Notes: generated from the sequence alone by a model not told the origin. Positions 36,301 through 55,385 are shown, numbered from the stretch's first letter. The stretch is DNA of 64,000 nt from Macrostomum lignano (GCA_002269645.1 NIVC01000385.1:575493-639492); one strand, 5' to 3'. Numbers and translations: made by a program.

Positions 36301-36540
36301 CTAAAACTTTGATGCATAGAAGTCTTGGTATCTTGCAGCCAGAGGGTACTCCGGCACTTCGTGATGTTGATGAAGCTTTGGCCTGTGGCACTGATGGCAC
36401 AGGTTTAAGACTTGCTGCTGGTACAGCTGATAAAGATGATGCTGCTGCTGCTGCTGCTGCGGAGCCGGTCCAAAAAGTTGCTGATAGTTGGTGACCATCT
36501 TTTTTAGGCGACTGTTCTCCAGTTCAAGATCTTTCAGTTT
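36301..36540 (-). CDS. Fos/ATF3-like bZIP gene C, last exon (short leucine zipper plus Gln/His tail)
   Basis: TTTTAG|AAA acceptor. Encodes KLKDLELENSRLKKMVTNY in frame with the basic exon. Stop at 36301-36303. Confidence 0.8.
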   Translation of the reverse strand, partial: KLKDLELENSRLKKMVTNYQQLFGPAPQQQQQQHHLYQLYQQQVLNLCHQCHRPKLHQHHEVPEYPLAARYQDFYASKF

Positions 36541-37249
36541 CTAAAATCGGAGGCACAGACTTCGTTTAGTTTTAACAAATTTTATTTAAGAAAGAATGCT
36601 TTTATATTGCAAACCGAAAACTTTTACACAACGGGACACATATTAACATATTAACATATTTTGTTTTACTCGTATGAAGTTTCATGAAGATGAAGCCTTA
36701 TGATTAAAAATGACAAAAAAATTCTCGATAGTGTCTTCTTCGTCGAAACGACGGCCTTCCAATATTCTTCTTAGAAACGAAGTTCCCGCGTCCTAAGCCG
36801 CCGAATCGAACTCCAAGAAAGATTTCAGCATGACGAGAAACTTCGTTTTGTAGAAAAACTGTAAGACTGGCTTCATGCGAAAATGCACCAGGAAGGTACG
36901 ACCTATAGGAATCTTTCTACAAAAATAGCGATAAAAACGATCTTTCAAAACGACATGCTTATTTCGTCGCTCTATTGACTTTTAAAACTTTCTCTCTAAT
37001 AAGAAGTTATTCATAAACTGTTTTATACTTTTAGCTAATGAGATTTTCAAATGACCAAATAGTCTCGCAATTAATTTTTCAGTATTCGATCTGTTTCCAC
37101 AATAAAACATTTCTGTTGCGCCGAAACATGAAAAGTTTCGATCTCGGTAGCTAGTGCATTTATTCACAGCCAGCCTTCAAAAACTTCCTTAGAAACGAAG
37201 TTTCTTATCGCCCTTCCCCCTTTTCGAATATCTGCTCAACTCAACTCAC

Positions 37250-37357
37250 GGTCTTCATTTTGGTCTCCTTGGACTTCTTGTTTTCCCGGCACCTTCTGGC
37301 TGACAATTTGTTTCGCTCTCGTCGGTCCTCCATCTTCCGGCGGGCCTCTTCGCTGAG
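37250..37357 (-). CDS. Fos/ATF3-like bZIP gene C, 108-nt basic-region exon
   Basis: CAG|CTC acceptor and ACC|GTGAGT donor. Encodes LSEEARRKMEDRRERNKLSARRCRENKKSKETKMKT (36 aa, Asn at position 16 as in c-Fos exon 3). Confidence 0.85.
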
Positions 37358-37479
37358 CTGCTCGGCAGAGGGGGGGGGGCAGGGGTGGCAGGATTTAGTG
37401 CGAGCTGATAGCTCTGTGCATCTAGCCGAATTCGTGTGCGTGAGCAAATCCTAAATTCCTTTGAAATACCCGCATTAAC

Positions 37480-38290
37480 CTTGGGGGAACCCTGGTTACC
37501 CCCCGAGATAATCATGGTTATACCCTTAGAGAGACCCTGGTTACCCAGCTTAGAGATACCCTGGTTACCCTTAGAGAGACCCTGGTTACCCTTAGAGAGA
37601 CCCTGGTTACCCTTAGAGAGACCCTGGTTACCCTTAGAGAGACCCTGGTTACCCTTAGAGAGAAACCCTGGTTACCCTTAGAGAAACCCTGGTTACCCAG
37701 CTTAGAGAGACCCTGGTTACCCTTAGAGAGAAACCCTGGTTACCCTTAGAGAAACCCTGGTTACCCAGCTTAGAGAGACCCTGGTTACCCTTAGAGAAAC
37801 CCTGGTTACCCAGCTTAGAGAGACCCTGGTTACCCTTAGAGAAACCCTGGTTACCCAGCTTAGAGAGACCCTGGTTACCCTTAGAGAGACCCTGGTTACC
37901 CTTAGAGAAACCCTGGTTACCCTTAGAGATACCCTGGTTACCCTTATAGAGACCCTGGTTACCCTTAGAGAGACCCTGGTTACCCTTAGAGAGACCCTGG
38001 TTACCCTTAGAGAGACCCTGGTTACCCTTAGAGAGACCCTGGTTACCCTTAGAGAGAAACCCTGGTTACCCTTAGAGAAACCCTGGTTACCCAGCTTAGA
38101 GAGACCCTGGTTACCCTTAGAGAAACCCTGGTTACCCAGCTTAGAGAAACCCTGGTTACCCTTAGAGATACCCTGGTTACCCTTATAGAGACCCTGGTTA
38201 CCCTTAGAGAGACCCTGGTTACCCTTAGAGAGACCCTGGTTACCCTTAGAGAGACCCTGGTTACCCTTAGAGAGACCCTGGTTACCCCTT
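37480..38290 (+). repeat. 21-bp minisatellite (GAGAGACCCTGGTTACCCTTA), intron of gene C
   Basis: Direct tandem repeat with slightly longer variant units. Confidence 0.95.
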
Positions 38291-38313
38291 GAGATCTCAC
38301 TGAAAGGACTCAC

Positions 38314-38463
38314 CTGCGGCGGCTGTGCCCTGACCGCGGCCAATTCCTTCGGATCAATTTCATCTTTGCCGCTGTTTATTCTGCTAAGGAGTATCTTGCA
38401 CTTCAGCTCCTCCATGACCAGCCGCCTGTACTCCTGCTGATGATCTTGGTCGTTCTGCTGCTG
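38314..38463 (-). CDS. Fos/ATF3-like bZIP gene C, exon with ATF3-type N-terminal motif
   Basis: AACAG|CAG acceptor and CAG|GTGAGT donor. LVMEELKCKILLSRINSG resembles ATF3 FVKEELRFAIQNK. Confidence 0.8.
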
Positions 38464-38516
38464 CTGTTAAAGTTTTATGTGTACAGATTGTAAGCGCAGT
38501 TTGAGCTATTCTTTTT

Positions 38517-39275
38517 CCTGTGTCAGCTGCGTCTCACTGTGTCAGCTGCGTCTCCCTGTGTCAGCTGCGTCTCCCTGTGTCAGCTGCGTCTCCCTGTGTC
38601 AGCTGCGTCTCCCTGTGTCAGCTGCGTCTCCCTGTGTCAGCTGCGTCTCCCTGTGTCAGCTGCGTCTCCCTGTGTCAGCTGCGTCTCTACTACCTGTGTC
38701 AGCTGCGTCTCCCTGTGTCAGCTGCGTCTCCCTGTGTCAGCTGCGTCTCTACTACCTGTGTCAGCTGCGTCTCCCTGTGTCAGCTGCGTCTCCCTGTGTC
38801 AGCTGCGTCTCTACTACCTGTGTCAGCTGCGTCTCCCTGTGTCAGCTGCGTCTCCCTGTGTCAGCTGCGTCTCTACTACCTGTGTCAGTTGGGTCTCTAC
38901 TCTCTGTGTCAGTTGGGTCTCTACTCTCTGTGTCAGTTGGGTCTCTACTCTCTGTGTCAGTTGGGTCTCTACTCTCTGTGTCAGTTGGGTCTCCCTGTGT
39001 CAGCTGCGTCTCCCTGTGTCAGCTGCGTCTTCCTGTGTCAGCTGCGTCTCTCTGTGTCAGCTGCGTCTCCCTGTGTCAGCTACGTCTCCCTGTGTCAGCT
39101 GCGTCTCCCTGTGTCAGCTGCGTCTCCCTGTGTCAGCTGCGTCTCCCTGTGTCAGCTGCGTCTCCCTGTGTCAGCTGCGTCTCCCTGTGTTAGCTGCGTC
39201 TCCCTGTGTCAGCTGCGTCTCCCTGTGTCAGTTGGGTCTCTACTCTCTGTGTCAGTTGGGTCTCTACTCTCTGTG
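38517..39275 (+). repeat. 19-bp minisatellite (CTGTGTCAGCTGCGTCTCC), intron of gene C
   Basis: Period 19 with slightly longer variant units. Confidence 0.95.
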
Positions 39276-39350
39276 TCAACTTCTACTCCCCTGTCAGTGC
39301 CAGATAGATTTATGGGTGTATTCTCCCCTAAATAAATGCCAGCAGCTTAC

Positions 39351-39356
39351 CGTCAT
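39351..39356 (-). CDS. gene C putative first coding micro-exon (ATG ACG)
   Basis: ATGACG|GTAAGC donor, phase 0 and in frame with the next exon. Upstream pyrimidine-rich CTTCAG acceptor at 39371. Confidence 0.6.
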
Positions 39357-39489
39357 GATGAGATGTGCACCTGAAGAAGCGAAGGATAACACAGTTTCAT
39401 AAAAATGTGTTAATTATTCACTATCAGAGTAGCAGCTGTACCAAGCCAATAAGATTGGTTCAACTCAAGCAGCACTTACAACGCTGGGG

Positions 39490-39750
39490 TTTATATAGAG
39501 CAGCCGTGAGCTATTAAAGATCGCCATAGCTGGTAGCATTTATCTCAGTACTAGCCACTAGCGTAAATTAGATGATTGAACGATGCGAAAATGAGGTGGC
39601 ACGCGGATATGCTTATGCATCCCGTATCAATAATTTTGTAGTTAGCCAACGCCCCCCCTCCAGCCAGCTCACCCGCCGCCGCAGCGCAATTCCGCAGCCA
39701 CCGGTGATTTGATAAGAATGCGGCCGCAAATTTTTTCAGCGATGACGTGT
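39490..39750 (-). promoter_or_regulatory. gene C promoter candidate: TATA box plus CRE/XBP1-type site
   Basis: TATATAAA on the minus strand at 39490-39497 and GATGACGTGT at 39741-39750. Confidence 0.45.
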
Positions 39751-40189
39751 GGCTGTAAAAATTAGCCAAGCCAAAGCCAGCCGCCATCCACTATTACATG
39801 TAGGTGAGCATGTCATTTTACACTAACAAGGACCCCGATAGATTTCTGCATTCTCTATCAACCGATGTTGTCAACCGGATTAACAGATTTTCTATAATGA
39901 TAAAACTGAATTACTTTTTATATTTTGTTGCACAGAACTTAAGATGAGTGTCCGATCCAAGTTAAGCGCTGTTGGTCCTGGCTAGTATAGGAAGTCATTA
40001 AGCTTTAGCTGTGCTTCTGTGCGACCTCTAATACAGTCTCAGCAGCTCGGCGGTGTTCGACTTCAACACAAGGACCACTAGGATTTGCAAGAAAATTGGA
40101 TCAGTGTGTTGTTGTTGTGCAATTCGAAACTCCTACATGTACAGGCACAGAAATTGTACACAATACACAATCTGACGATTAGAAAGTCA

Positions 40190-40330
40190 GGACCGCTGTA
40201 CACCCTGTGTGAGCGTGTGCATGAGTGCCTGTCTGCGTACAGCATTGGCGCGCTTGCATGTGCTCAGGAGTCTGCGGAATGGGCAGAATTGCCTCAGCGT
40301 GTGGTTGCCGAAGGCGTTACGCCAAGTTCT
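40190..40330 (+). mobile_element. diverged fragment of the SINE family 1 body
   Basis: CCGCTGTACAC...GCGCGCTTG...GCGGAATGGGCAG aligns to the SINE at 6691. Confidence 0.6.
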
Positions 40331-40429
40331 TGCCTAAAATGCTACCGGTCAGCAGGAAAACTACCGGCGAAGTTTCAGCAGTCCCTGACTCTGCATGGCG
40401 TGCATTTTTTTCTGGCTCAGATGTTTTTC

Positions 40430-41025
40430 TACCGGATTTGTCTATGGCGCAACCCCATTTGCACATGAAACCCGGATTTGTCTATGGCGCAACCGGCCAT
40501 TTGCACATGAAACCCGGATTTGTCTATGGCGCAACCCCATTTGCACATGAAACCCGGATTTGTCTATGGCGCAACCGGCCATTTGCACATGAAACCCGGA
40601 TTTGTCTATGGCGCAACCCCATTTGCACATGAAACCCGGATTTGTCTATGGCGCAACCGGCCATTTGCACATGAAACCCGGATTTATCTATGGCGCAACC
40701 CAATTTGCACATGAAACTCTGATTTGTCTATGGCGTAACCCCATTTGCACATGAAACCCGGATTTATCTATGACGCAACCCCATTTGCACATGAAACCCG
40801 GATTTGTCTATGGCGCAACCGGCCATTTGCACATGAAACCCGGATTTGTTTATGGCGCAACCCCATTTGCACATGAAACCCGGATTTGTTTATGGCGCAA
40901 CCCCATTTGCACATGAAACCCTGATTTGTCTATGGCGAAACCTCATTTGCACATGAAACCCGGATTTGTCTATGGCGCAACCTCATTTGTAGATGAAACC
41001 CGGATTTGTCTATGGCGAAACCCCA
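40430..41025 (+). repeat. 40-42-bp minisatellite (GATTTGTCTATGGCGCAACCCCATTTGCACATGAAACCCG), about 14 copies
   Basis: Direct tandem repeat between genes B and C. Confidence 0.93.
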
Positions 41026-41744
41026 ACCCCGTTTGCCCATGTGCAAAAAAGCAAATCTGTTTTAGAAAGCCAAACTGTCTATTTTTTAGCTTTGCCGCTT
41101 CTTGAGAATATTTTTCAAACTTTTCTTGAAACACTTGCGCATCAAACTCGGAAAAAAACATGTCATGGGGAACTCGAAAGTGAGTGCAGAAAGTGGGAAA
41201 TCACGCATTGGGAGTCAAGCTAATTTTCCTCTCATCTCATCAAAAAAGAATAAAAAGCCGCACTCATAAACAACTGTTTAGAGCAGCAATTTCAAATGCA
41301 GGAAAGCGATCTGAGATGTACTTTTATTAAACAGTACAGGGAGTACTCTATCAGGCGGAACACACAGTTGACAATAATTCGAAAAAGCAAATCCTTTAAT
41401 TAGAGAATAAAAAATGACAATGGCTGATCTCACATGATTTTGCAGAATGAATGCTACTAGATTTACTATTCTGCACATTGAATCACAGTTATTGGCATTG
41501 ATTTTGGATATCTATTTTTTATTCATCTCTGTACAGCAGAAAAAAATCAATATTGAACTTCGCTCTGTTAATAACTGCAGACTGTAAAGGCACTTCGACG
41601 TGCTGTGTTGTTGCGGATGGAAACCAGCACCATAGCAACGAGTGTTTACCACCCTGGAAACACCTTGAGAAACTTATTAAATGACTGAAGATTTTGGCTC
41701 GGAGTTAGACTGGATTGGGATCATGATCAGAAGCGTGCTCTGGC

Positions 41745-42405
41745 TGGGATCAGGGATGGGATCAAAGCTAGCATCATGGCTATGGTCATAGTTAAGATCA
41801 TTGAGCTGGGATCATTTAGCTGGCATTAAAGCTGGGATCAAAGCTGGGATCTAGCTGGGATCAAAGCTGGAATCGTAGTCAAGATCTAGCTGGAATCTAG
41901 CTGGGATCATAGGGATCTACCTGGGATCTAGCTGGGATCATATCTGGGATCTAGCTTGGATCAAATCAGGGATGTAGCTGGGATCTAGCTTGGATCAAAT
42001 CAGGGATGTAGCTGGGATCATAATAGGGATCTAGCTGGGATCATAGTCGGGATCTAACTGGGATCATAGCTGGGATATAGCTGGGATCATAGCTGGGATC
42101 TAGCTGGGATCATAGCTGGGATCTAGCTGGGATCTAGCTGGGATCTAGCTGGGATCTAACTGGGATCATAGCTGGGATATAGCTGGGATCATAGCTGGGA
42201 TCTAGCTGGGATCTAGCTGGGATCATAGCTGGGATCTAGCTGGGATCTAGCTGGGATCATAGCTGGGATCTAGCTGGGATCTAGCTGGGATCATAGCTGG
42301 GATGTAGCTGGGATCATAGTCGGGATCTAGCTGGGATCATAGTCGGGATATAGCTGGGATCATAGCTGGGATATAGCTACGATCTAGCTGGGATCTAGCT
42401 GGGAT
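41745..42405 (+). repeat. 10-11-bp repeat (AGCTGGGATC(T/AT))
   Basis: Direct tandem repeat. The stop of gene B falls at its edge. Confidence 0.92.
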
Positions 42406-42659
42406 TTGGAATCCTGATTGAGATGGCGGCAATCCGTAGCAAAGCTGGTAGATGACGCAGTTTCCAAAATCTGGCGAACATTCAGCAGCAGGCGGCTCAG
42501 CCACGGATCCAGCGGGTCGGCCTGCTCCAGCCGCCGGGTCAGGAAGCTGAGCAGGCAGCTGGGAGATGGGAAGTCGCCAAGCAGCTCGGCAAATTCCTGC
42601 CTGGCCGAATCGAGGCAGCGCCTCAGCCTGAGCAGCTCGAGTTCGCTGTGCCGGATTTG
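42384..42659 (-). CDS. Fos/ATF3-like bZIP gene B, last exon (degenerate zipper)
   Basis: TTTCTCCAG|CAA acceptor, phase 0. Encodes QIRHSELELLRLRRCLDSARQEFAELL in heptad register with the basic exon. The 3' end is less certain. Confidence 0.7.
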   Translation of the reverse strand, partial: QIRHSELELLRLRRCLDSARQEFAELLGDFPSPSCLLSFLTRRLEQADPLDPWLSRLLLNVRQILETASSTSFATDCRHLNQDSKSQLDPS

Positions 42660-42664
42660 CTGGA

Positions 42665-42890
42665 GAAATAGAACAGTAGAATAGAACAATAAGATAGAAC
42701 AATAGGATAGAACAATAGGATAGAACAATAGGATAGAACAATAGGATAGAACAATAGGATAGAACAATAGGATAGAACAATAGGGTAGAACAACAGGATA
42801 GAACAATAGGATAGAACAACAGGATAGAACAATAGGATAGAACAACAGGATAGAACAACAGGATAGAACAATAGGATAGAGCAACAGGAT
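42665..42890 (+). repeat. 13-bp repeat (AGGATAGAACAAT)
   Basis: Period 13 (42721 to 42734). Confidence 0.93.
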
Positions 42891-43569
42891 ATAAGAATTT
42901 TCAGGAGAGAACGGTAGAATAAAAAATAGAATGGAACAACTGGAAGGCCCGGGATGGGCCAGGGAAGCCTCTGTGTTCGCTTTGCTCAAGCAGAATCCAT
43001 AATTGTATAATTTACACAAAACAGACAGACCGAGTTACAGAGCAGCCTCTCACATAATTTGGTATATAACTCCCATTTTCTGCGGCCGATTTTGATAATT
43101 ATTCAAAGCATTCAAGGCGGCAGTTTTTTCTATTAGTACTCGGTGAACTTTGGAAAAGAGACAATTTCCCAATTTTCGATAATTAACCTCGAAAAGTTGC
43201 AGAAAGTTTTTTGACACTTCCAAAACTCCCAGGAAACCGAGAGGCTTCCCTAGATTTTTTGAGACCGAAATGCTGCTAGCAGTGAAAGGCGGTGGTTAAG
43301 AGACTTTGAGCCAAGTCAGTCAGTCTATAAACAGCTTAGGTAAACAGACTGATAAGGAAGCCCTGTGTAAGTGCTTGTTATCTGTCCACAGCCCCCAGTG
43401 CAGAAGTGTATCAATCTAGGCATCTACTTGACCAAAAGTGGACGCTAGTTAATTACTAATCTGCATCAGATTAAATTGCAAGCCACAAACTTTAAAATTG
43501 AATAACAAAGTAAATATGCTTTTTTTACAGTAGCTAATTTTTGCTGTGCTTAGCTGATGAAACCGGTGT

Positions 43570-44660
43570 CTGGAACAGGTGAAGCCTGTGTGTATAGAAC
43601 AGGTGAAGTTCGTGTCTAGAACAGGTGAAGTTCGTGTCTAAAACAGGTGAAGTTCGTGTCTAGAACAGGTAAAGCCCGTGTCTATAACAGGTAAAGCCCG
43701 TGTCTATAACAGGTAAAGCCCGTATCTATAACCAGTAAAGCCCGTATCTATAACCGGTAAAGCCCGTGTCTATAACAGGTAAACCCCGTATATAGAACAG
43801 GTAAAGCCCATGTCTATAACAGGCAAAGCCCGTGTCTATAACAGGTAAAGCCCGTGTCTATGACTGCTAAAGCACGTATCTATAACCGGTAAAGCCCTTG
43901 TCTATAACAGGTAAACCCCGTGTCTGTAACAGGTAAACCCCGTATCTATAACAGGTAAAGTCCGTGTCTATAGCAGGTAAAACCTGTATCTAGAACAGGT
44001 AAAGCCCGTGTCTATAACAGGTAAACCCCGTATATAGAACAGGTAAAGCCCATGTCTATAACAGGCAAAGCCCGTGTCTATAACCGGTAAAGCCCGTGTC
44101 TATGACAGCTAAAGCACGTATCTATAACCGGTAAAGCCCTTGTCTATGACAGCTAAAGCACGTATCTATAACCGGTAAAGCCCTTGTCTATAACAGGTAA
44201 ACCCCGTGTCTGTAACAGGTAAACCCCGTATCTATAACAGGTAAAGTCCGTGTCTATAGCAGGTAAGGCTCGTGTCTATAACAGGTAAACCCCGTGTCTA
44301 TAACAGGTAAAGCCCGTGTCTATAACAGCTAAAGCACGTATCTATAACCGGTAAACCCCGTGTCTATGACAGGTAAAACCTGTATCCAGAACAGGTAAAG
44401 CCCGTGTCTATGACAGGTAAAACCTGTGTCTAGAACAGGTAAAGCATGTGTATAGAACAGGTGAAGTTTGTGTCGTGTCTGGAAGAGGTAAAGACCTGTC
44501 TAGAACAGGTAAAGCCTCTGACAAGAACATGTGAAATTTGTGTCTCGAGCAGGTAAAGCCCGTGTCTATAACAGGTAAAAGCTGTGTCGAGAACAGGTAA
44601 AGCCCGTGTCTATAACAGGTAAATCCCGTGTCTAGAACAGGTAAAGTTCACGCCTGTAAC
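43570..44660 (+). repeat. 22-bp minisatellite (AACAGGTAAAGCCCGTGTCTAT), about 50 copies, intron of gene B
   Basis: Period 22 (43681 to 43703). Confidence 0.93.
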
Positions 44661-44732
44661 AGACAAAGCCGGTGTACAAATAATTACCGGATTAGTCTGG
44701 GAGGTGGATCCTACAACCAACAAGTCACTAAC

Positions 44733-44840
44733 CTCAGTCAGCTGGGAGAACTCCAGCCGTCGCTTCGCCCGGCACCTCCTCGCCGCCAGCCGGTTGCCCG
44801 CCCGCCGTCTCTCCTGCATTTGCAGCGTCTCCTCGCTTAA
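44733..44840 (-). CDS. Fos/ATF3-like bZIP gene B, 108-nt basic-region exon
   Basis: TGCAG|TTA acceptor and GAG|GTTAGT donor. Encodes LSEETLQMQERRRAGNRLAARRCRAKRRLEFSQLTE (36 aa, N-x7-R motif). Confidence 0.85.
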
Positions 44841-45158
44841 CTGCATGTGGAAAACATGGATTTGGGACAAAACGCTATCCTGGCTACTAATAGCGGTGTA
44901 ATAAGCATTTTTGATTCCAAATTTACGCTGCCAGTGAATAAATGCGTCATAGCACGCCGAGACGGTAGAGTTTGGCGGATTCTCCAATGCACTAATAAGT
45001 CCCGTCTGCCTGTCTGCCTGTCTGTAACTCCGGTGCAGCCCCGTGTGCGCCTTTTGAACACAAATGTCAGCTGATTAGCCTGGGGGCAGCGCACCTATAC
45101 CTATATTGGTCTTCCAGACGGATGCTCATTCATTAATGCCCCCCCCGCCATGACTCAC

Positions 45159-45359
45159 AGGCGATTCAACATTTCTCTCGGTGTCCTCAACAGCCGAGGC
45201 GGACAGCGAGCGGCCCTGCCGAAGCAGCTTGAGCTGAATCTGGCAGCTCAGCTCCTCGCGCACCAGCCAGCTGAGCAGCCGACCCTCTTCGGGCGCCTCG
45301 CTTGGCCGCTGGCTCGGCCCGGCCTGGCCGCTGCCACCGCTGCCGCTGCCGCTAGCCAG
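45159..45359 (-). CDS. Fos/ATF3-like bZIP gene B, exon with ATF3-type motif (5' boundary uncertain, no ATG)
   Basis: Encodes LLSWLVREELSCQIQLKLLRQG (ATF3-like). CCT|GTGAGT phase-0 donor at 45158. An in-frame TGA lies just upstream. Confidence 0.7.
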
Positions 45360-45371
45360 CTTTGCTGAGCG

Positions 45372-45420
45372 TCACGTGATTTCCGGTTTTTGGCCGGGTC
45401 GCTGCGCCAAGCCAATTTTA
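45372..45420 (-). promoter_or_regulatory. motif cluster upstream of gene B (CCAAT, ETS-like CCGGAAA, TCACGTGAC E-box)
   Basis: The plus strand reads GTCACGTGATTTCCGG...GCCAATT immediately 5' of the gene B exon. Confidence 0.35.
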
Positions 45421-45599
45421 GCAGTAATTAGTCAGCATGTACATGAATAATAATGGGAACACGATATAAATAGCTAAAATCTTAATCTCAGTCCGATCTG
45501 GTGTAAGAAAACGGCCGTAGGTCACGTGATAGAGTGAAAGACAGTGCGGAGAACGAGACAATAGGATAGAAGAATGAGACAGTCATGTGATATAGTTAG

Positions 45600-46460
45600 A
45601 GACAGGATGAGAGAGACAGGGTGAGAGAGAGAGACAGGGTGAGAGAGAGACGGCGAGAGAGAGACAGGGTGAGAGAGAGAGACGGCGAGAGTGAGACAGG
45701 GTGAGAGAGAGAGGGGGTGAGAGAGAGACAGGATGAGCGAGACAGGATGAGAGAGACAGGATGAGAGAGACTGGGTGAGTGAGAGAGACAGGATGAGAGA
45801 GACTGGGTGAGAGAGAGACAGGATGAGAGAGACTGGGTGAGAGAGAGACAGGATGAGAGAGAGACAGGGTGAGAGAGAGACATGATAACAGAGGTAGGGT
45901 GAGAGAGAGACAGGGTGAGAGAGAGACAGGATGAGAGAGAGACAGGATGAGAGAGAGAGACAGGGTGAGAGAGAGACAGGATGAGAGAGAGAGACAGGGT
46001 GAGAGAGAGAGACAGGGTGAGAGAGAGAGACAGGGTGAGAGAGAGACAGGATGAGAGAGAGACAAGGTGAGAGAGAGACAGGGTGAGAGAGAGACAGGAT
46101 GAGAGAGAGACAAGGTGAGAGAGAGACAGGGTGAGAGAGAGACAAGGTGAAAGAGAGACAAGGTGGGAGAGAGACAGGGTGAGAGAGAGACAAGGTGAAA
46201 GAGAGACAAGGTGAGAGAGAGACAGGGTGAGAGAGAGACAGGGTGAGAGAGAGACAAGGTGAAAGAGAGACAAGGTGAGAGAGAGACAGGGTGAGAGAGA
46301 GACAAGGTGAGAGAGAGACAAGGTGAGAGAGAGACAGGGTGAGAGAGAGACAGGGTGAGAGAGAGACAGGGTGAGAGAGAGACAAGGTGAGAGAGAGACA
46401 GAATGAGAGAGAGACAGGGTGAGAGAGAGAGAGAGACAGGGTGAGGCAGGAGAGAGGGTG
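45600..46460 (+). repeat. (GAGAGAGACAGGGTGA)-type low-complexity repeat
   Basis: Visible tandem repeat. Confidence 0.95.
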
Positions 46461-47229
46461 AGAGTGAGAGGGAGTTAATACAAGAGCAGGGCGAAGGCAA
46501 AATGAGACAGATACCTAGTCTAGTGGGCGTCATGCGAAGGAGCTCGTAACAATAATTAATCCTCAATGACCATGCACACTTATAGACGCATGCGATGAAT
46601 ATCGAAATTCAAGCAAATAAGTATCAATACATTTTCGTTCTTTAGTGAACTTATCTAGATTTGCCTGGCGCTGCAATCTTATAATCATAAATACATTAGT
46701 TAAGCTGTTGCATGTCAATTTTGTTATTCTTACCTTTGCTGAAAGCAAAGCCGACTCACTGCAGTTCAGACCAATGCGATATTCGGCCAACAGCAAAATC
46801 TGCTGCTTCAACAATAGGTATACTTTATAGCTGAAGGGAATAACAAATTTAAAGCCACTGCGCCGATAGGGCCGCCGATAGGCCGCGTGTGACCGCACGT
46901 CGGCTCACTGGGAGAGGCCAGTTGTATTTGTACGGAGAGCGCGGGGTCGGCTGGGGCTATTTTTAGAACTGTCGTCATTGGCTCACCGTACGGACCCCGA
47001 ATTTAACTGGCTGCCGGCTCGCGGCAATGAAATGTGTTCATTGCATATTGTACGAGTACACTCCCCCCAGCCCAGTCAGTTCATAAAGCACGGCCGGCCC
47101 TGGGGCTGCCTGTGAAGATCCAGCAGCGAGCAGAATGCCGTCAGAGAATGATTTTTGCAATGTAAATACCCGGAAAAAGTTTCTTGCACTGCTGACAGTG
47201 ATTGGAAGAAAATCGGTGAACTTGGAAAA

Positions 47230-48137: not shown

Positions 48138-48138
48138 C

Positions 48139-48212: not shown

Positions 48213-48283
<71 letters not shown>

Positions 48284-48365: not shown

Positions 48366-48829
48366 GTTTAGACACAACAGTTTAGATTTAAATGAAAAAC
48401 GCTGCATGCAGTCAATAATAACACGGATTTTCAACCGCAATAACAGAGCGGGACCAATAAGACAAAACAGCGTCTATCATACAAAAAGTGAGCGAGCCGT
48501 TCTATTTGTCACCGCGGTGCAGGAATCAGCGCACACAAAAACTGTTCGCATTTCGGAGAAGTGAAATACAGTCATAAGCACAGGGTCAGTAGTTGAGCCG
48601 GGATGAAAAACCGTAACAAACGACAAGTGCAAAAACAGTGCAAAATACAAAAATTGACTCAGATTAGCAGGGAGGTTTGCTGAAAAGTGCTATGAAAATT
48701 GAAACTCCCGGCACAATAATGTCATGAATTAAATTCAACACGAGCGGCAAGGCTCAAGGGCTCAGCTGGTTGGTTCTACTCCAGCACTCCAGTGGGCACA
48801 GCTAAATTTACTTTTCATAGCTGAGGGAG

Positions 48830-50039: not shown

Positions 50040-50430
50040 GGACAACTAGGACAATCTGGACTGATAGCTTCTCAAAAATATTCAAAGACAACTAAGTAAG
50101 ACAATCCTGGACTGATAGCTTCTCCTCAAAGATTAAATTCAAGGACAACTAAGTAGACAATCCTGGACTGATAGCTTCTCCTCAAAGATTAAATTCAAGG
50201 ACAACTAAGTAAGACAATCCTGGACTGAAAGCTTCTCCTCCAAGATTAAATTCAAGGACAACTAAGTAAGACAATCCTGGACTGAAAGCTTCTCCTCCAA
50301 GATTAAATTCAAGGACAACTAAGTAAGACAATCCTGGACTGAAAGCTTCTCCTCAAAGATTAAATTCAAGGACAACTAAGTAGACAATCTGGACTGATAG
50401 CTTCTCAAAAATTAAATTAAAGGACGACTT
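50040..50430 (+). repeat. ~57-bp tandem repeat (GGACAACTAAGTAAGACAATCCTGGACTGATAGCTTCTCC...), about 7 copies
   Basis: Visible tandem repeat. Confidence 0.9.
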
Positions 50431-51136
50431 AAGTAGGGAGGACAGGAAACTTTATTTCTTAGAAAACTCACTACTCCAAGACTTTTAAATGGAGCACTTG
50501 TACTTTTATTAATATACAAGACGTCTAGACAAATATTTAGCAGAAATTTTCACAGGTTTCCCGACCCTGAGTATTTTTTAAGTCAGAAGGGGGCTATATC
50601 CGAAGCCCAGATCTCCAGCTCACTCTGACTCAACAGCGCCAATAGATGAAGAATATCAATAGATTATTATTACAAAACTTGAAACACGATACAAAAAAGC
50701 AGAGCAAATTGAACTAACAAAGAAACACAAGAATTGCAGAAGAAAAAGCACAACAAACTAGAAATAAACTGCAATAAAAGTTGAGAACTGAAAAATGGTA
50801 TTATAAAAGCAGAAACCGGATCGCTGGGGATGGGATGGAGCTAATCATAAAGCAAGTTATGCTGTTCTAGACCAGATTAGAATTATATTGTATTAATAAC
50901 TATAAACGCAAAACAAAAATCAATGCATATAAATATGCTTTATATACAGTCATCAAAACTTAGGTACTTTTTGGACAACCCGATAAGACGCTGAAATCAT
51001 CGAAATCAACTCAAGAATATAAAAAGAGTTTCTGAATCAAAACTAAACAAACGATTGAAACTGAAAATACACCAATAATACATCCTGACTTTTTATTCCA
51101 GCTTTATTTAGTTTAAAGGCAATCTTTCTCTTCAAG

Positions 51137-51439
51137 AGGGGTTGCAGCCTAGTGGTTAGAGTGTCTGACTCATGACCAAAGGTCGGGGGTTCGATTCCCG
51201 ATCCCACTGGAACAATTTGTGTCCCTGAGCAAGACAACTCTGCATTGCTTCAGTTCACCCAGCTGTAAAATGGGTGCCAGCATTAGCTGGGGTAACTGAG
51301 GGTGTGTGGCGACCCCCCAGTCCTTGGACTGGACAGCCGTACGCAGCCTTCAGATGCGCCGTGCAATAGCTGCGGCTGAGCTTTCGGCTGCTCATCTAGC
51401 CGAATTGGGGCAGGTGTAGTTAATTATGAATTATTATTA
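51137..51439 (+). mobile_element. tRNA-derived SINE, family 2, with a CORE-like domain
   Basis: A-box GCAGCCTAGTGGTTAGAG, B-box GGTTCGATTCC, central TGTGTCCCTGAGCAAGAC...CTGTAAAATGGG resembling the MIR CORE, and (ATT)n tail. TSD TTCTCTTCAA at 51126-51135 and 51440-51449. Confidence 0.85.
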
Positions 51440-51899
51440 TTCTCTTCAAAGATACTGGCAATTTGTCCTCTAATCTTCCCTAAGCTGTTTGTCAGTTTGT
51501 CGCGCCTCTCCCAGACCTTTGACGCGCACACATCTCGATCTACAACACCTGAGCCTCACAGGCGCAGGCACAGATACTATAAACACTAGACAGGCCACTC
51601 CAGCCAATCCTCACAACACGACAGTTTACTCTACTTTCTGCTTAGTAGTAGTAAAAACATTTTAGCGTTATTTATATTTTTTAAAATAAAAAAACAGATG
51701 AATGCAATGCAGCAATTGTATTGATTTTTTGCAAAAAGAAACTTATAATTATACTTTCCACAATTCAAAGCAACATTGTGAATGCTTTAGATTGCATAGA
51801 AGGCTATATTATTGCAGTCTACTATTGTATATTTAGCAAATACGAGCTATATCATATACTCCATAATCCATATTCGTGAAGCAAAATAGAAAGATTTCT

Positions 51900-53127
51900 C
51901 ATCTTAATCAGCTCATCTGTTTGTGAAACTCGCAGCGTGCTGTCGAAGAACAGGGTCGCCAGTCGCCCTTGTTCAGAGGCAGCATTCAGAACGGCCCAAC
52001 AGATGAAAAAAACTGGCGAATGCGCCACTTCAAGGTCCAGGGATGTATCCGATGGAGCCAATCCTCAGTGGTTTCGTAACAGGCAGCCGATAAGCAGCAG
52101 GACTTTTGTGGTGCAGCTGCAATGAGCTGCTGATGAGATGACATCCTTTGACCAGAGCACCCCTGACTGCGAGCGCCCTGCCGCCCAGTCGACCGCTGGA
52201 AGCTGCGCTAGCCACGCCTCCACAGTCCATGGATGCACGACTGCGCTGCACTTGCCTTGACCATCGAGAGTTGCCGCTGCAGCCGCTTGATTTGCCTGTC
52301 GCTTTCGGGATTGCCGCTGCAGCCGCTTGATTTGCCTGTCGCTTTCGGGATTGCCGCTGCAGCCGCTTGATTTGCCTGTCGCTTTCGGGATTGCCGCTGC
52401 AGCCGCTTGATTTGCCTGTCGCTTTCGGGATTGCCGCTGCAGCCGCTTGATTCGCCTGTCACTTTCGGGATTGCCGCTGCAGCCGCTTGATTCGCCTGTC
52501 ACTTTCGGGATCGTTGCTGCAGCCGCTTGATTCGCCTGTCACTTTCGGGATCGTTGCTGCAGCCGCTTGATCTTTGCCTCTAGCGCTTGGAACCCGCGAA
52601 TCGGCTGCAGAGGTGAGAGCTTTCAGCCGCAACAGCTGTTCTCGGCGCAGAATCTGGTAGCCGAAGGTTGCTCTGCCACAGCACTGGCAGCAGGCAAGTC
52701 GCAGGCTCGGCTGCAGATAGATTGCTAATTGGCCCCAGCACTGGAGGGTACATGTCGTCTGCCTCTTCATCGTTTATCAGTCCTTTGCACAGAGGGTAGC
52801 TGGTCTATTTGAACGAGCCGAGGCAGCATCAACTCTTGGTGTGGGATTGCGTCCCAGCGAAAACAGATGTCTTGCACATCCGTGGCACTTTGTAAGGCAG
52901 CAGTAGGCCTCGTCCATAAAGTGCAAGCTGAACACACGGAGGCCCCGTGATTTAATTGTTTATAAAGATCAATATCCACGCTCCTGTAGTAGCTGCTGCC
53001 AGCGCTTCGCCAGTGTCATCTTTTGGTAATTTATGCATTCGCAACGGATTTTTCTTTCTCGGATGTTAATAGCACTAGTACAAAGCTCGTGCAAGTGGGA
53101 GCACAGCAGTGGTTCGAATCAAAACAT
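51900..53127 (-). pseudogene. THAP-domain P-type transposase remnant (frameshifted, truncated after the first catalytic Asp)
   Basis: Across frames: NHCCAPTC, HKLPKD, AKRWQQLL, LRVFSLHF, WDAIP (THAP domain); LEAKIKRLQ coiled coil; WSKDVISSA/LQLHHKSPAAYRL and RLATLFFD, resembling the P transposase segments DISTAICLHTAGPRAY and LCVLAFDE. Confidence 0.82.
52271..52570 (+). repeat. 40-bp minisatellite inside the transposase remnant (7.5 copies)
   Basis: TTGCCGCTGCAGCCGCTTGATTTGCCTGTCGCTTTCGGGA at an exact 40-nt period. Confidence 0.95.
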
Positions 53128-53638
53128 TTCTCGAGTACAAGATTAGATAGAAAAGCTAGTATGCACTCGAACTTTCTTTAACTCTGACTCTTGTCCTGTT
53201 CATCTATATAAGCTTGTATTTAAGCACGATTCGCCACCCCCAAATTTTCTAACCCACAACCTCTCAACCCCCACCCCACCCCTAACCCAGGCTAGCTATG
53301 TGCAGTCCTTTATTTTCTATCCCACCACCAGTAGGCCTAAATTATCGATCCACTCACCCTGCCTTATACGAAACTGATATTAACCCTATTCCAGACTACC
53401 CCCCTTCCTCCACTTTGAAAGATAGCGGCATTGCACACTGTCTGTCGCGTCTTAATGTACACCATTACTGCACAAAACAAGTTAGTTGTTTATGGCGCTA
53501 GCAAAACGATGTCTTAAAAACAGTCACTCGATTTGTCTAATTTAGCAAATAATACTGTTGCTTCCTTTCATTGCTACTAAGCAGAAAGTAGAATAAAAAA
53601 CTTGCCCAGAAAATTAGCCTGAGTGGCCTATCTAGTGT

Positions 53639-54154
53639 TTATAGTATCTGTGGGCGCAGGTAGCCGCCTTCTGCCTGGCCGCCGTCTGGGAAGCCGTCAA
53701 TCAGCTGGGAGCCCAGCGGTTGCAGCTCATGGCCGGAGCCGCCAAGCGCCCCACTGCCGAACGAGGAGCCCAGGCCTCCGCCGCCGCCGCACCGGCTGGA
53801 CGAGCTGAGGCAGGACTCGCTGCCTTCGTCCGCTTCACCCACTGACGATAGCGAAGCCTGCGCCGGCTGATGCTGCAGCTCCTCGGATTCGGCAACTGCG
53901 GCGTCGGCGGAGGCCAGCAGTTCGCCGGAGTCCGGGCAGCGCAGTCGATGGGCCCGGACCTCGCCAATCAGCTGACTGCGCCGGCTAATCAAGTGCGACA
54001 CCGTGGACTCCAGCTGGGCATTGTCGGACTCCAGGCCGCGTACAGCCTCAGTGAGGCATTCGATGCGATCTTGGCGCTTCTTGCGGCACTTGGCTGCGGC
54101 CACTCGATTGCGCTCGCGGCGCTTCTCCCGGCGCTGCAACTCCTCCGGCTGGCT
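53639..54154 (-). CDS. Fos/ATF3-family bZIP gene A, last exon (complete bZIP)
   Basis: CTTCTCCGCCAG|AGC acceptor. Encodes RRERNRVAAAKCRKKRQDRIECL, a full L-x6 zipper and the HRLRC motif (Fos/ATF3 HxxxC). The stop lies inside the P-element TIR. Confidence 0.92.
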   Translation of the reverse strand, partial: SQPEELQRREKRRERNRVAAAKCRKKRQDRIECLTEAVRGLESDNAQLESTVSHLISRRSQLIGEVRAHRLRCPDSGELLASADAAVAESEELQHQPAQASLSSVGEADEGSESCLSSSSRCGGGGGLGSSFGSGALGGSGHELQPLGSQLIDGFPDGGQAEGGYLRPQIL

Positions 54155-54339
54155 CTGGCGGAGAAGGGCAGGCGGACAGGCCAATGCGCGACACAAAGCA
54201 CAAACATTTCAAACAAAATGCTAACCGTTTTTTCAGGACATTAGGTGGGTGCACACGGGGGAACCAGCGTGGTAGCGCCATCATGGAGGCGCTTAGCCTG
54301 GCAAGGAGGCGCCATCGTGGGGGCGCCAGCAACAGCAGT

Positions 54340-54505
54340 AAGTACTCTACCCTCTCCAGCCATTCATTCAGTAAGCACCCTACCCTCTCCAGCCATTCAT
54401 TCAGTAAGCACCCTACCCTCTCCAGCCATTCATTCAGCAAACACCCTACCCTCTCCAGCCATTCATTCAGCAAGCACCCTACCCTCTCCAGCTACTTTTT
54501 CAGCA
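54340..54505 (+). repeat. 33-bp repeat, about 5 copies, intron of gene A
   Basis: Period 33 (54371 to 54404). Confidence 0.9.
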
Positions 54506-54680
54506 AGCACCCTATCCTCAAAAGATCATTAATTCAGTAAGCGCAGCTACCCTTTCTAATAATTAATTCAGCAAGCGATGCTCTCCAATGCTTTATGACG
54601 CTGCCCCAACCCAACCAATTAGGGATCAGGCTATCCTAAGCAACTACAAAGTAAAATTAAAGCAATATAACCTAACCAAC

Positions 54681-55274
54681 CTTAGCCGTTTTACTCCAAA
54701 ATTTCCGACCTCCGCCAGTGCCGGTGGCCGCGCCGCTTCGCTGCTTCTTCGACGACCGACTTTTTGTTAAAGCTCCGCTGGTGCCGCCATCAACAGCTGC
54801 TAGCAGATTCGAATCTCCATCATCGCCAGTGTCATCAATCTCGTCTTCATCGTTATCGTCTTGATCAACGTCTTCGTTGAAATGGGCGCCTAAAGGCTCT
54901 GACTGGACGGTAGGCGGCGGCGGAGGCTGCTGCTGATGGTGCTGCAGCAGGGGCTCGGTGAGCGGCAGCTGTAGCTGTTGCACATAGTGCTCTTGCGGAT
55001 GCTGGAAATGATGCTGATGATGCTGATGATGCAAATGATGAGGCATATCAGCATAGCCTTGGCCGCCTAACAATGGGCCATTGGAAAGTACAATTGGCTT
55101 CAGTATGAGCCCCGGCTCAAGCGACTGCTGGTGCGGCTGGTGATGATGCGGCTGCTGCACCGGATGCTGCTGGTAGCAGCTAGCCGCCGATAAGTAGGCT
55201 CCGCCGCTGCTGCCGCCGCTGGCGTCGATGCAAAAATTTGCCGAATTGTATCCCGCATTAATATTGGTTGTCAT
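54681..55274 (-). CDS. Fos/ATF3-family bZIP gene A, N-terminal exon (His/Gln/acidic-rich); the exon may extend to an acceptor at 55370
   Basis: ATG at 55274, open frame to a phase-0 AAG|GTTGGT donor. TTTCAG|GTC acceptor at 55371 is in the same frame. Confidence 0.75.
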
Positions 55275-55385
55275 GACAACGATTCCGCCGCTGCCGACGC
55301 CGGAACTGGGAACTGCTGCGAAGCCGCTGATTTCAGTTGGGCTTCGGGCAGCAGAGTCGGAGTAGATGACCTGAAATTCGAATAG

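What the first reader, a model, noticed from the sequence alone, without database searches (positions are those of the whole stretch)
36301..55370. Tandem cluster of three divergent Fos/ATF3-family bZIP genes
The three genes are co-oriented within 19 kb, and two are nearly invisible in the ORF track because minisatellite introns split them. All start the basic region at the same phase-0 intron position as c-Fos exon 3. Genes B and C keep the exact 108-nt exon and an ATF3-type (V/M)xEEL motif, while gene A lacks the following intron and has a complete zipper plus HxxxC. Gene B has a degenerate zipper (d positions L,S,L,A,L) and RAGN for RERN. Gene C has a short zipper (M,L,L,Y) and NKLSA for NKxAA. 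This suggests a lineage-specific AP-1 expansion with altered dimerisation or DNA specificity, possibly including modulators or dominant negatives of wound and stress responses (inference).
Basis: partly seen in the sequence, partly recalled or inferred. Interest (0 to 1): 0.75.

Follow-up and report, generated by a model that had tools for sequence, protein, structure and literature searches.

The report
Flatworm Fos plus ATF3/JDP2-like gene cluster
Three co-oriented bZIP transcription-factor genes of the flatworm Macrostomum lignano (one Fos-like, then two small ATF3/JDP2-like) are real, intact and under purifying selection, and their order and orientation match the Fos-ATF3-JDP2 array of amphioxus and the Fos/Jdp2/Batf locus of mammals, so the cluster looks old rather than a flatworm novelty.

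Summary
The window is Macrostomum lignano DNA. Independent database proteins reproduce every junction at 99% identity.

- Genes B and C are divergent members of the metazoan ATF3/JDP2 family. They have the N-terminal KEELK-type motif, the 108-nt basic-region exon and a separate zipper exon.
- Gene A has Fos-like architecture, but its zipper is Jun/ATF3-like. Its subfamily is unresolved.
- All three are under purifying selection across homeologous copies: C 6 synonymous and 0 nonsynonymous changes, B 4 and 1, A pN/pS 0.23.
- The "degenerate" RAGN and NKLSA basic regions have counterparts in related invertebrate proteins, so they do not point to dominant negatives.

The Fos to ATF3-type linkage is not lineage-specific. 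Amphioxus has a co-oriented Fos, ATF3, JDP2-like array. Mouse Fos, Jdp2 and Batf are neighbours. A second M. lignano locus repeats the Fos-like then ATF3-like order. The B/C duplication itself may still be lineage-specific.

Still unresolved: B's start codon, direct transcript evidence for C, and any wound or stress role.

The parts
53639..54154 (-). Gene A, last exon. It carries the basic region, a complete 5-heptad zipper, H-R-L-R-C and an acidic/Ser-Gly-rich tail, and includes the stop codon. There is no intron between the basic region and the zipper.
   Evidence: Pfam bZIP_1 50.1 bits, E 3e-13. tblastn of P0001 is 99.4% identical. The acceptor ccgccag| lies 15 codons before the invariant Asn. 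Against copy L001 this exon shows 3 synonymous and 0 nonsynonymous differences.
54155..54680 (-). Gene A intron, phase 0, mostly a 33-bp minisatellite (54336-54542).
   Evidence: The same intron is 1351 nt in copy L001.
54681..55370 (-). Gene A N-terminal coding exon. The first in-frame ATG is at 55274. It is His/Gln-rich, then acidic, and ends ...GGGRKFWSKTAK| with donor AAG|gttggt. The reading frame stays open up to the acceptor at 55371, so further 5' exons are possible.
   Evidence: tblastn of P0001 is 97.8% identical. The GGGRK motif aligns with the mite Fos P0003.
45159..45371 (-). Gene B motif exon (...EEGRLLSWLVREELSCQIQLKLLRQG...NVESP|gtgagt). It has no in-frame ATG in any of the three genomic copies.
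   Evidence: The motif HMM hit has E 0.028 and is the second best of 2001 chunks.
44733..44840 (-). Gene B 108-nt basic-region exon: LSEETLQMQERRRAGNRLAARRCRAKRRLEFSQLTE.
   Evidence: cag|TTAAGC...ACTGAG|gttagt. 100% match to P0005.
42384..42659 (-). Gene B zipper and C-terminal exon (QIRHSELELLRLRRCLDSARQEFAELL...), stop included.
   Evidence: The spliced protein passes Pfam bZIP_2 at 24.5 bits against a cutoff of 22.3.
46909..46978 (-). Candidate 5' coding exon of gene B (uncertain). ATG at 46978, donor CCA|GTGAGC at 46908, in frame with the acceptor at 45364.
   Evidence: Enumeration of ATG/donor/acceptor combinations. Part of the exon lies in the stretch 46730-46910, which is 100% identical in copy L010. 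One UniProt model (P0010) includes sequence from here.
38314..38463 (-). Gene C motif exon (QQQNDQDHQQEYRRLVMEELKCKILLSRINSGKDEIDPKELAAVRAQPPQ|gtgagt). The first genomic ATG is at 38415. The acceptor ttaacag| is in frame.
   Evidence: Motif HMM E 1.9e-8.
37250..37357 (-). Gene C 108-nt basic-region exon: LSEEARRKMEDRRERNKLSARRCRENKKSKETKMKT.
   Evidence: gagcag|CTCAGC...AAGACC|gtgagt. tblastn of P0013.
36301..36540 (-). Gene C zipper and Gln/His-rich C-terminal exon (KLKDLELENSRLKKMVTNYQQLF...), stop included.
   Evidence: The spliced protein passes Pfam bZIP_2 at 29.9 bits. Across three copies the gene shows 6 synonymous and 0 nonsynonymous changes.

Best explanation
The region is a tandem, co-oriented array of three functional AP-1-type bZIP transcription-factor genes of Macrostomum lignano.

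Gene A is a long, divergent Fos-like protein of at least 369 aa. Genes B (about 200 aa) and C (149-166 aa) are small ATF3/JDP2-family proteins. B and C share a three-part build: a conserved N-terminal KEELK-type motif exon, a 108-nt basic-region exon and a zipper exon.

Shown here: intact genes, family membership of B and C, purifying selection, and the same gene order and orientation in amphioxus and in a second M. lignano locus.

Inferred:
- The Fos to ATF3-type linkage is a retained remnant of the ancient tandem duplication that produced the Fos and ATF3/JDP2 families.
- The proteins bind TRE/CRE-like sites as dimers. C's zipper favours homodimers or pairing with other Asn-bearing zippers: it has an a-position Asn and two attractive g-e' pairs. 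A has the same Asn. B has an all-hydrophobic a-layer with a mixed d-layer.
- B and C, which have no obvious activation domain, modulate AP-1 output as ATF3 and JDP2 do.
For: Gene models and junctions.

bZIP domain.

Family of B and C:
- The exhaustive profile search gives 267 hits. Most of the top non-Macrostomum hits are 130-330-aa animal proteins matched in one stretch from motif to zipper.
- Their source names include ATF-3(-like) from Branchiostoma, Asterias and Clavelina, and JDP2-like from Actinia and Asterias.
- The independent motif HMM supports the motif in both genes.
- The identical 108-nt exon, with Asn at codon 16 and the d1 residue at codon 34, occurs in Actinostola, Asterias, Lineus, Gigantopelta, amphioxus ATF3 and JDP2-like, and M. 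lignano Mlig024024.

Selection: C 6 synonymous and 0 nonsynonymous changes (P about 6e-5), B 4 and 1 (P about 0.017), A 7 and 5 with pN/pS 0.23. Exons are 97-100% identical across copies. Unique intron, intergenic and flank segments are mostly 93-99% identical, and repeat-rich stretches 89-95%.

Transcript-based annotation covers A and B (method described in PMC8629364).

Synteny:
- Amphioxus L008 carries Fos (FosB E 4e-23), then ATF3, then a 162-aa JDP2-like gene, all on the + strand within about 22 kb.
- In mouse, cFos and Batf are called 'neighboring genes' of Jdp2 (PMC2724284).
- M. lignano locus L002 has a Fos-like ORF about 4 kb upstream of ATF3-like Mlig024024 on the same strand.
- FOS and ATF3 are reported as sister families (PMC4736632).
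Against: - Gene A's bZIP is not cleanly Fos. Its best solved-structure match is JunD (E 3.5e-9), ahead of FosB (1.6e-6). Its best ungapped domain score is to amphioxus ATF3. If A is a derived ATF3-type gene, the synteny argument weakens.
- The NJ tree puts B, C and Mlig024024 together, though with only 15-31% bootstrap. That would fit a lineage-specific B/C duplication.
- No linked bZIP gene was seen within +/-10 kb in a mite, a sea star, a nemertean or Actinia.
- B has no in-frame ATG ahead of its motif. The transcript-based annotation calls only a 120-aa product starting at an internal Met.
- C is absent from that annotation.
- There is no expression, DNA-binding or dimerisation data.
Confidence: 0.6

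Rival explanations
1. This is a lineage-specific expansion. A, B and C, together with the Mlig024024 locus pair, arose by tandem and segmental duplication inside the Macrostomum or flatworm lineage and then diverged quickly. The resemblance to the chordate Fos-ATF3-JDP2 order is coincidence.
For: - The NJ point estimate groups B, C and Mlig024024.
- Mlig024024 is the best or near-best hit of both B and C.
- A's bZIP scores highest against ATF3 rather than Fos.
- Tandem duplicates of this family arose in other lineages too: Gigantopelta and Actinostola.
- No linkage was seen in the mite, sea star or nemertean within 10 kb.
Against: - Bootstrap support is only 15-31%.
- B and C share just 28% identity and are not each other's best hits.
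- A lacks the KEELK motif that defines ATF3/JDP2. It has the GGGRK pre-basic motif and the CRKKRxD(Q/R) signature (x = Q or V) shared with an arthropod Fos.
- The same order and orientation are seen in amphioxus.
Confidence: 0.3
2. B, and possibly C, is a decaying or non-coding duplicate. B has no start codon for the motif exon, an odd basic region (AG in place of ER before the Asn) and a weak d-layer. It may be an expressed pseudogene or may yield only a truncated 120-aa product.
For: - No in-frame ATG precedes the motif in any of three copies.
- NCBI's transcript-based model starts at Met79.
- The motif HMM gives only E 0.028 for B.
- bZIP_1 scores below its cutoff (23.2 against 27.6).
- C is missing from the transcriptome-based annotation.
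Against: - All three copies keep every exon open and in frame with canonical splice sites.
- The synonymous-to-nonsynonymous counts are 4:1 for B and 6:0 for C.
- Spliced B and C pass the bZIP_2 cutoff.
- An in-frame upstream ATG exon is possible. So is an AUG donated by the spliced leader, because the SL ends in ATG and in-frame AG acceptors exist.
- RRRAAN-type basic regions occur in other family members.
Confidence: 0.1

Closest known systems
ATF3 / JDP2 family (vertebrate ATF3 and JDP2; invertebrate 'ATF-3-like' and 'JDP2-like' proteins)
   Same: B and C share these features with the family:
- small size;
- an N-terminal (L/I)(I/V)KEELKxxIQxxRLxxG motif about 30 residues before the basic-region exon;
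- a phase-0 intron 15 codons before the invariant Asn;
- a 108-nt basic exon and a separate zipper exon.
C also has the a-position Asn in heptad 2, as ATF3 does.
   Different: B has AG in place of (E/D)R before the Asn, Ser and Ala at two d positions, and a roughly 90-aa unique C-terminal extension. C has N-x2-SA in place of N-x2-AA, only about 3.5 heptads, then a Gln/His-rich tail. Neither keeps the H-x3-C that follows the zipper in most family members. The motif is weak in B.
Fos family (c-Fos, FosB, Drosophila kayak, mite Fos P0003, amphioxus Fos)
   Same: Gene A shares these features with Fos genes:
- the phase-0 intron position;
- the AAAKCR basic core;
- a GGGRK motif 7 residues before the exon boundary (mite Fos: GGGRKPHSSQN|);
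- the CRKKRxD(Q/R) extension (x = Q or V);
- H-R-x-x-C after the zipper;
- no KEELK motif, a long N- and C-terminus, and the 5' position in the array.
Like amphioxus Fos, it has the basic region and zipper in one exon.
   Different: A's zipper has an a-position Asn and scores better against JunD and ATF3 than against Fos. Vertebrate Fos has Lys or Thr at a-positions and a strongly acidic e/g surface. No Fos C-terminal motifs were recognised.
Chordate Fos-ATF3/JDP2(-BATF) gene arrays (amphioxus Fos, ATF3, JDP2-like; mouse and human Fos/Jdp2/Batf locus)
   Same: The Fos-type gene comes first, followed by one or two small ATF3/JDP2-type genes, all in the same orientation. This spans about 19 kb here and about 22 kb in amphioxus. 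In mouse, Fos and Batf neighbour Jdp2.
   Different: Orthology of B to ATF3 and of C to JDP2 is not established. No BATF-like gene (without the motif) was seen here. The flanking genes differ: spectrin here, ATG14 in amphioxus.

Membership tests
bZIP superfamily (Pfam PF00170 / PF07716) | Basic region with N-x2-AA-x2-(C/S)R, followed in register by a heptad leucine zipper, scoring above the Pfam gathering cutoff. | tested here: met
   A scores 50.1 bits on bZIP_1. Spliced B scores 24.5 and spliced C 29.9 on bZIP_2, against a cutoff of 22.3. Both fall just below the bZIP_1 cutoff, at 23.2 and 27.2 against 27.6.
Fos/ATF3 superfamily | A phase-0 intron 15 codons upstream of the invariant Asn. | tested here: met
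   A, B and C all have it. The same position is seen in amphioxus Fos, ATF3 and JDP2-like, and in the Actinostola, Asterias, Lineus and Gigantopelta genes. The human FOS exon 3 boundary is recalled from memory only.
Fos/ATF3 superfamily | A 108-nt (36-codon) basic-region exon ending two codons after the first zipper d residue. | tested here: met
   Met for B (44840-44733) and C (37357-37250). Not met for A, which has the basic region and zipper in one exon. Amphioxus Fos also has them in one exon, so this does not exclude A.
ATF3/JDP2 family | The N-terminal KEELKxxIQxxRLxxG motif about 25-35 residues upstream of the basic exon. | tested here: met
   A motif HMM built from 95 non-Macrostomum proteins gives C exon 1 E 1.9e-8 and B exon 1 E 0.028. 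These are the two best of 2001 window chunks, and the next best has E above 4. Nothing is found near gene A. The match for B is weak.
ATF3/JDP2 family | Closest full-length relatives are ATF3/JDP2-type proteins, matched as a single stretch from motif to zipper. | tested here: met
   Shown by the profile search together with the source names ATF-3 and JDP2-like.
ATF3/JDP2 family | Orthology of B to ATF3 and of C to JDP2 specifically. | tested here: inconclusive
   NJ bootstrap support is below 35% for any placement. The BLOSUM scores lean slightly towards tunicate ATF3-like proteins for B and cnidarian JDP2-like proteins for C.
Fos family (gene A) | bZIP domain closest to Fos proteins. | tested here: inconclusive
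   With the full-length protein, the best non-Macrostomum hits are the mite Fos P0003 and c-Fos. With the bZIP domain alone, JunD (3.5e-9) beats FosB (1.6e-6), and amphioxus ATF3 gives the best ungapped score.
Fos family (gene A) | Fos-type heterodimer-only zipper: no a-position Asn and an acidic e/g surface. | tested here: not met
   By direct reading, A has Asn at a2 (GLESDNAQL) and only a mildly acidic e/g surface. The zipper aligns best with Jun.
Fos family (gene A) | A G-G-R-(R/K) motif just upstream of the basic-exon boundary, and no KEELK motif. | tested here: met
   A has GGGRKFWSKTAK|. The mite Fos has GGGRKPHSSQN| and c-Fos has IGRRGKVEQ|. No KEELK motif is found near A. That this motif defines Fos rests on few sequences.
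Jun family (gene A, considered) | An RIAASKCRKRKLERI basic region, and the protein ending shortly after the zipper. | tested here: not met
   A has AAAKCR rather than AASKCR, about 100 residues after the zipper, and the Fos/ATF3 intron position.
Immediate-early / wound-induced AP-1 genes | Rapid induction after wounding or stress, with SRE/CRE-type promoter elements. | not testable with these tools
   No expression data were reachable. CRE (0 matches), TRE (8 against 10 expected) and CArG (9 against 4.8 expected, none placed at promoters) are not informative.

The most novel reading that the evidence does not exclude
The A, B, C array is a surviving copy of the ancestral bilaterian Fos-ATF3/JDP2 tandem array. 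That array is the physical trace of the duplication that created these families. On this reading its order and orientation have been kept in a spiralian (twice, at two paralogous M. lignano loci), in amphioxus and, stretched out, in vertebrates (FOS-JDP2-BATF). Such retention would imply a long-standing constraint, for example shared regulatory elements for co-induced immediate-early genes. I found no description of this microsynteny in the searchable literature.
Probability: 0.45. Interest if true: 0.55.

Novelty: new member of a known kind. Interest (0 to 1): 0.4.

Why it matters
AP-1 factors (Fos, Jun, ATF3) are among the first genes switched on after wounding in many animals, and M. lignano is a regeneration model that can be made transgenic.

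This work identifies which of its 'hypothetical' bZIP genes are Fos-like and which are ATF3/JDP2-like. It corrects misleading database entries: frameshifted models with unrelated automatic names, and a 120-aa truncation of B. It also gives three closely linked candidates for knock-down and reporter studies.

The repeated Fos to ATF3-type order in flatworm and chordates, if confirmed by broader synteny, would document an old conserved transcription-factor gene array. It would suggest that shared regulation holds these stress-response genes together.

Tried and rejected
- The seven apparent 45-62% 'paralogs' of gene B (P0006-P0012) are not paralogs. They read the same exons in shifted frames, and two fuse B with C. 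They are artefacts of an indel-rich assembly.
- Exact-sequence look-ups of the UniProt B and C proteins found no contigs.
- Classifying A, B and C against solved structures is limited, because the searches returned no ATF3, JDP2 or BATF chain. B and C gave only weak generic bZIP hits, and C's top hit (a cytochrome c555 trimer) is a Gln-rich artefact.
- NJ with bootstrap on the 65-aa domain gave no supported deep nodes.
- Scans for CRE, TRE and CArG promoter motifs showed no enrichment. The TRE at 45151 simply overlaps B's splice donor.
- Checks for linked bZIP genes around the mite Fos, the sea-star JDP2-like, the nemertean 'c-Fos-like' and the Actinia JDP2-like genes found none within 10 kb. 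The Actinostola neighbour is a second ATF3/JDP2-like gene, not Fos.
- Enumerating ATG/donor/acceptor combinations for B's 5' end gave 362 possibilities and only one attractive candidate, so the start codon remains open.
- Literature searches for a described Fos-ATF3-JDP2 synteny, or for M. lignano bZIP or Fos studies, found nothing specific.
- Structure prediction was not run. A monomeric coiled-coil model would not discriminate between the hypotheses.

Full report
**Origin of the window.** The spliced product of the largest bZIP gene is 99% identical to NCBI 'hypothetical protein BOX15_Mlig024519g1' of the free-living flatworm Macrostomum lignano. Three other genomic copies from assembly GCA_002269645.1 align to the window with rearranged minisatellites: L001 at 93-98% identity, and L010 and L011 at about 89-98% over most of their length. 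The window is therefore one homeologous or allelic copy in this hidden-polyploid genome.

**Checking the observation.** A six-frame scan for the bZIP basic-region signature finds three credible sites in 64 kb, all on the minus strand. Reading the DNA gives canonical, frame-consistent splice sites.
- Gene A: 55370-54681 | 54154-53639.
- Gene B: 45371-45159 | 44840-44733 | 42659-42384.
- Gene C: 38463-38314 | 37357-37250 | 36540-36301.

Independently annotated proteins map back onto exactly these blocks and junctions at 98-100% identity. They are P0001, P0005 = UniProt A0A1I8I4N8, and P0013 = A0A1I8I3V8.

- The basic-region exon begins 15 codons before the invariant Asn, in phase 0, in all three genes.
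- B and C have the exact 108-nt exon.
- A has no intron between the basic region and the zipper.
- The d positions are L,S,L,A,L in B and M,L,L,Y in C.
- RAGN, NKLSA and H-R-L-R-C are present.
- The introns are dominated by minisatellites.

Splicing raises C's Pfam bZIP_2 score from 13.4 to 29.9 bits. It extends B's alignment over the whole domain at 24.5 bits, against a cutoff of 22.3. This supports the models on its own.

**What B and C are.** I built a profile from the B+C alignment (28% identity) and searched it exhaustively against 1.8 billion representatives. It gave 267 hits.

After the Macrostomum entries, most of the best hits are 130-330-residue animal proteins. Each matches in one stretch running from profile position about 30 (the LVxEEL motif) to about 130 (the zipper). 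Their sequences share (T/L)P(L/I)IKEELKxxIQxKRLxxGxxEL, then about 25-35 residues, then L(T/S)xEE...RRRERNxxAAxxCR and a zipper.

The names given by the sources include:
- 'cyclic AMP-dependent transcription factor ATF-3(-like)' in Branchiostoma, Asterias and Clavelina;
- 'jun dimerization protein 2-like' in Actinia and Asterias;
- many uncharacterised mollusc proteins.

As an independent test, I built a motif HMM from 95 non-Macrostomum members only and ran it against all 2001 six-frame chunks of the window. The two top hits are the predicted first coding exon of C (E 1.9e-8) and of B (E 0.028). The next best has E above 4, and nothing appears near gene A.

The three-exon structure, with a 36-codon basic exon (Asn at codon 16, first zipper d residue at codon 34), is found directly in genomic DNA of:
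- a sea anemone (L004);
- a sea star (L007);
- a nemertean (L006);
- a gastropod (L005);
- amphioxus ATF3 and a JDP2-like gene (L008);
- a further M. lignano gene, Mlig024024 (L002).

B and C are therefore divergent members of the ATF3/JDP2 family.

Their unusual basic regions are not unique. RRRAAN occurs in P0016. N-x2-SA occurs in bivalve (Sinanodonta, Saccostrea) and other unnamed hits (P0028, P0054, P0021). N-x2-SA-x2-(S/C)R is also the normal form in plant and CREB3/ATF6-type bZIPs (established knowledge). B keeps all of N, AA and CR.

**What A is.** With the full-length protein, A's best relatives outside Macrostomum are a mite Fos (P0003, itself closest to c-Fos) and snake c-Fos.

The features A shares with Fos are:
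- the intron position;
- AAAKCR;
- a GGGRK motif just before the exon boundary;
- a CRKKRxD(Q/R) extension (x = Q or V);
- H-x3-C after the zipper;
- no KEELK motif.

Its zipper, however, has an a-position Asn and looks Jun/ATF3-like. JunD is the best solved-structure match (E 3.5e-9 against 1.6e-6 for FosB). Amphioxus ATF3 gives the best ungapped domain score.

NJ bootstrapping resolves only that A groups with two M. lignano paralogs, A0A1I8HEP3 and an unannotated ORF in L002, at about 40%. I call A Fos-like by architecture, with its subfamily unresolved.

**Are the genes functional?** Across three genomic copies, C has 6 synonymous and 0 nonsynonymous substitutions. The binomial P is about 6e-5 given 80% nonsynonymous sites. 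B has 4 and 1 (P about 0.017). A against L001 has 7 and 5, with pN/pS 0.23 and 3:0 in the bZIP exon. Exons are 97-100% identical, while repeat-rich introns and spacers are 89-95% identical and vary in length.

A and B are in the transcriptome-derived Mlig_3_7 annotation (the method is described in PMC8629364). C is only in the older UniProt set.

One open problem is that B's motif exon has no in-frame ATG in any copy. NCBI therefore calls a 120-aa product from Met79, which would drop the conserved motif. There are two possible solutions:
- an upstream exon (ATG 46978, donor GTGAGC at 46908, acceptor at 45364, in frame);
- an AUG donated by the spliced leader, because the M. lignano SL ends in ...TTGCATG and in-frame AG acceptors exist for both B and C. 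This is inference.

**Lineage-specific or ancient?**
- In amphioxus chromosome CM022886.1, the ATF3 gene (P0075) is preceded on the same strand by a gene whose last exon is unmistakably Fos (FosB E 4e-23). It is followed 3 kb downstream, again on the same strand, by a 162-aa JDP2-like gene with the motif and the 108-nt exon.
- In mouse, cFos and Batf are described as the 'neighboring genes' of Jdp2, the 'Fos/Jdp2/Batf locus' (PMC2724284). From memory, human FOS, JDP2 and BATF lie co-oriented at 14q24.3.
- In M. lignano itself, a second locus has an unannotated Fos-like bZIP ORF (L002 5752-6114). It lies about 4 kb upstream of, and co-oriented with, the ATF3-like Mlig024024.
- FOS and ATF3 are reported as sister families that split on the bilaterian stem or earlier (PMC4736632).
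- B and C are not each other's closest relatives.

Together these points favour an inherited Fos to ATF3-type array over a recent flatworm expansion.

There are caveats:
- A's Fos identity is not secure.
- The NJ point estimate groups B, C and Mlig024024, though weakly.
- The family duplicates in tandem in other lineages: Gigantopelta and Actinostola.
- No linkage was visible within 10 kb in a mite, a sea star, a nemertean or Actinia.

I put about 0.45 on the specific 'ancestral array' reading. I put about 0.6 on the overall explanation, namely functional Fos-like plus ATF3/JDP2-like genes with the Fos to ATF3-type linkage inherited.

**Mechanism (inferred from the families).** The three proteins should bind TRE/CRE-type sites as dimers. 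The heptad readings below use the g-e' rules of Vinson and colleagues (established knowledge).
- C has Leu/Asn/Val/Phe at a positions and K-E and E-K g-e' pairs. This is a short but homodimer-competent zipper that could also pair with other Asn-bearing zippers, such as A or Jun.
- A has Asn at a2 and one repulsive D-E pair. It could form both homo- and heterodimers, unlike vertebrate Fos.
- B has an all-hydrophobic a-layer (I, L, L, F, F), one attractive E-R pair and a unique helical-looking C-terminal extension.

B and C lack obvious activation regions, as do ATF3 and JDP2, which act largely as repressors or modulators. A modulatory role is therefore plausible, but nothing here shows dominant-negative behaviour. 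No wound or stress link could be tested, and promoter motif scans were uninformative.

**Verdict.** The family assignment is right at the superfamily level and can be sharpened: B and C are ATF3/JDP2-type, and A is Fos-like. The 'lineage-specific, degenerate' framing is weakened. The genes are ordinary in kind and are already present in databases as uncharacterised proteins. The repeated Fos to ATF3-type gene order across phyla is a modestly interesting lead that I did not find described in the searchable literature.

Noticed in passing
window 188-11381 (+): A multi-exon spectrin-repeat gene lies at the start of the window, about 25 kb beyond the 3' end of the bZIP cluster (Pfam Spectrin E 2.5e-39 and 2.8e-17 on two ORF blocks).
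   Followed up: partly
window 14233-18800 and 25200-27883, with 23661-24167 between them: A large inverted repeat has a 1391-nt core that is 99% complementary. Its arms continue as Pro-rich minisatellite ORFs. It flanks a remnant of a piggyBac-type transposase (DDE_Tnp_1_7, E 6.6e-5). This may be a composite transposon or a palindromic rearrangement.
   Followed up: partly
window 54155-54680, 45372-46900, 42660-44732, 37358-38313; loci L001, L010, L011: Almost every intron of the three bZIP genes is mostly minisatellite. Array lengths differ strongly among homeologous copies: the A intron is 526 nt here against 1351 nt, and B intron 2 is 2073 nt against 3008 and 1657 nt. The exons remain 97-100% identical.
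   Followed up: partly
window ~55385-55700 and ~51141-51444: Two SINE-like repeat copies match related copies in locus L001 at about 84% identity. Their translation suggests a tRNA origin ('GIEPPTF...DALTTRLQ'). One abuts the acceptor of gene A's first coding exon.
   Followed up: no
window 51568-53653 and 29630-35560: There are structural differences between copies. About 2 kb containing a 40-bp minisatellite, directly 3' of gene A's stop, is absent from L001, where the protein ends differently (...GGYLRL against ...GGYLRPQIL). A GA-rich block of about 6 kb is absent from L011.
   Followed up: partly
UniProt A0A1I8JS05, A0A1I8F8P2, A0A1I8FD91, A0A1I8F8Z9, A0A1I8F200, A0A1I8FPX9 (P0006, P0008-P0012) and one more UniProt entry (P0007): These database entries are named 'ARHGB factor', 'SCAN box domain', 'DEAD/DEAH box helicase', 'Coiled-coil domain containing 117' and similar. 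They are frameshifted models of gene B, and two fuse B with C. The names are spurious.
   Followed up: yes
L002 5752-6114 (+), M. lignano NIVC01004211.1: An unannotated Fos-like bZIP ORF (RRRERNRAAAARCRKKRQDQLDGLAAEVRELETERAELESRV; Pfam bZIP_1 34.8 bits) lies about 4 kb upstream of the ATF3-like gene Mlig024024 on the same strand. It is followed by a microsatellite.
   Followed up: partly
L004 ~14650-17170 (-), Actinostola sp. JAUJYZ010001042.1: An unannotated second small ATF3/JDP2-like gene has three exons (motif KENLRTTIQCRRRARGLNEL, and a 108-nt exon LSRHEEESRRIRRERNKEAANKCRKKKREKVDILEK). It lies tail-to-tail with the annotated JDP2-like gene.
   Followed up: partly
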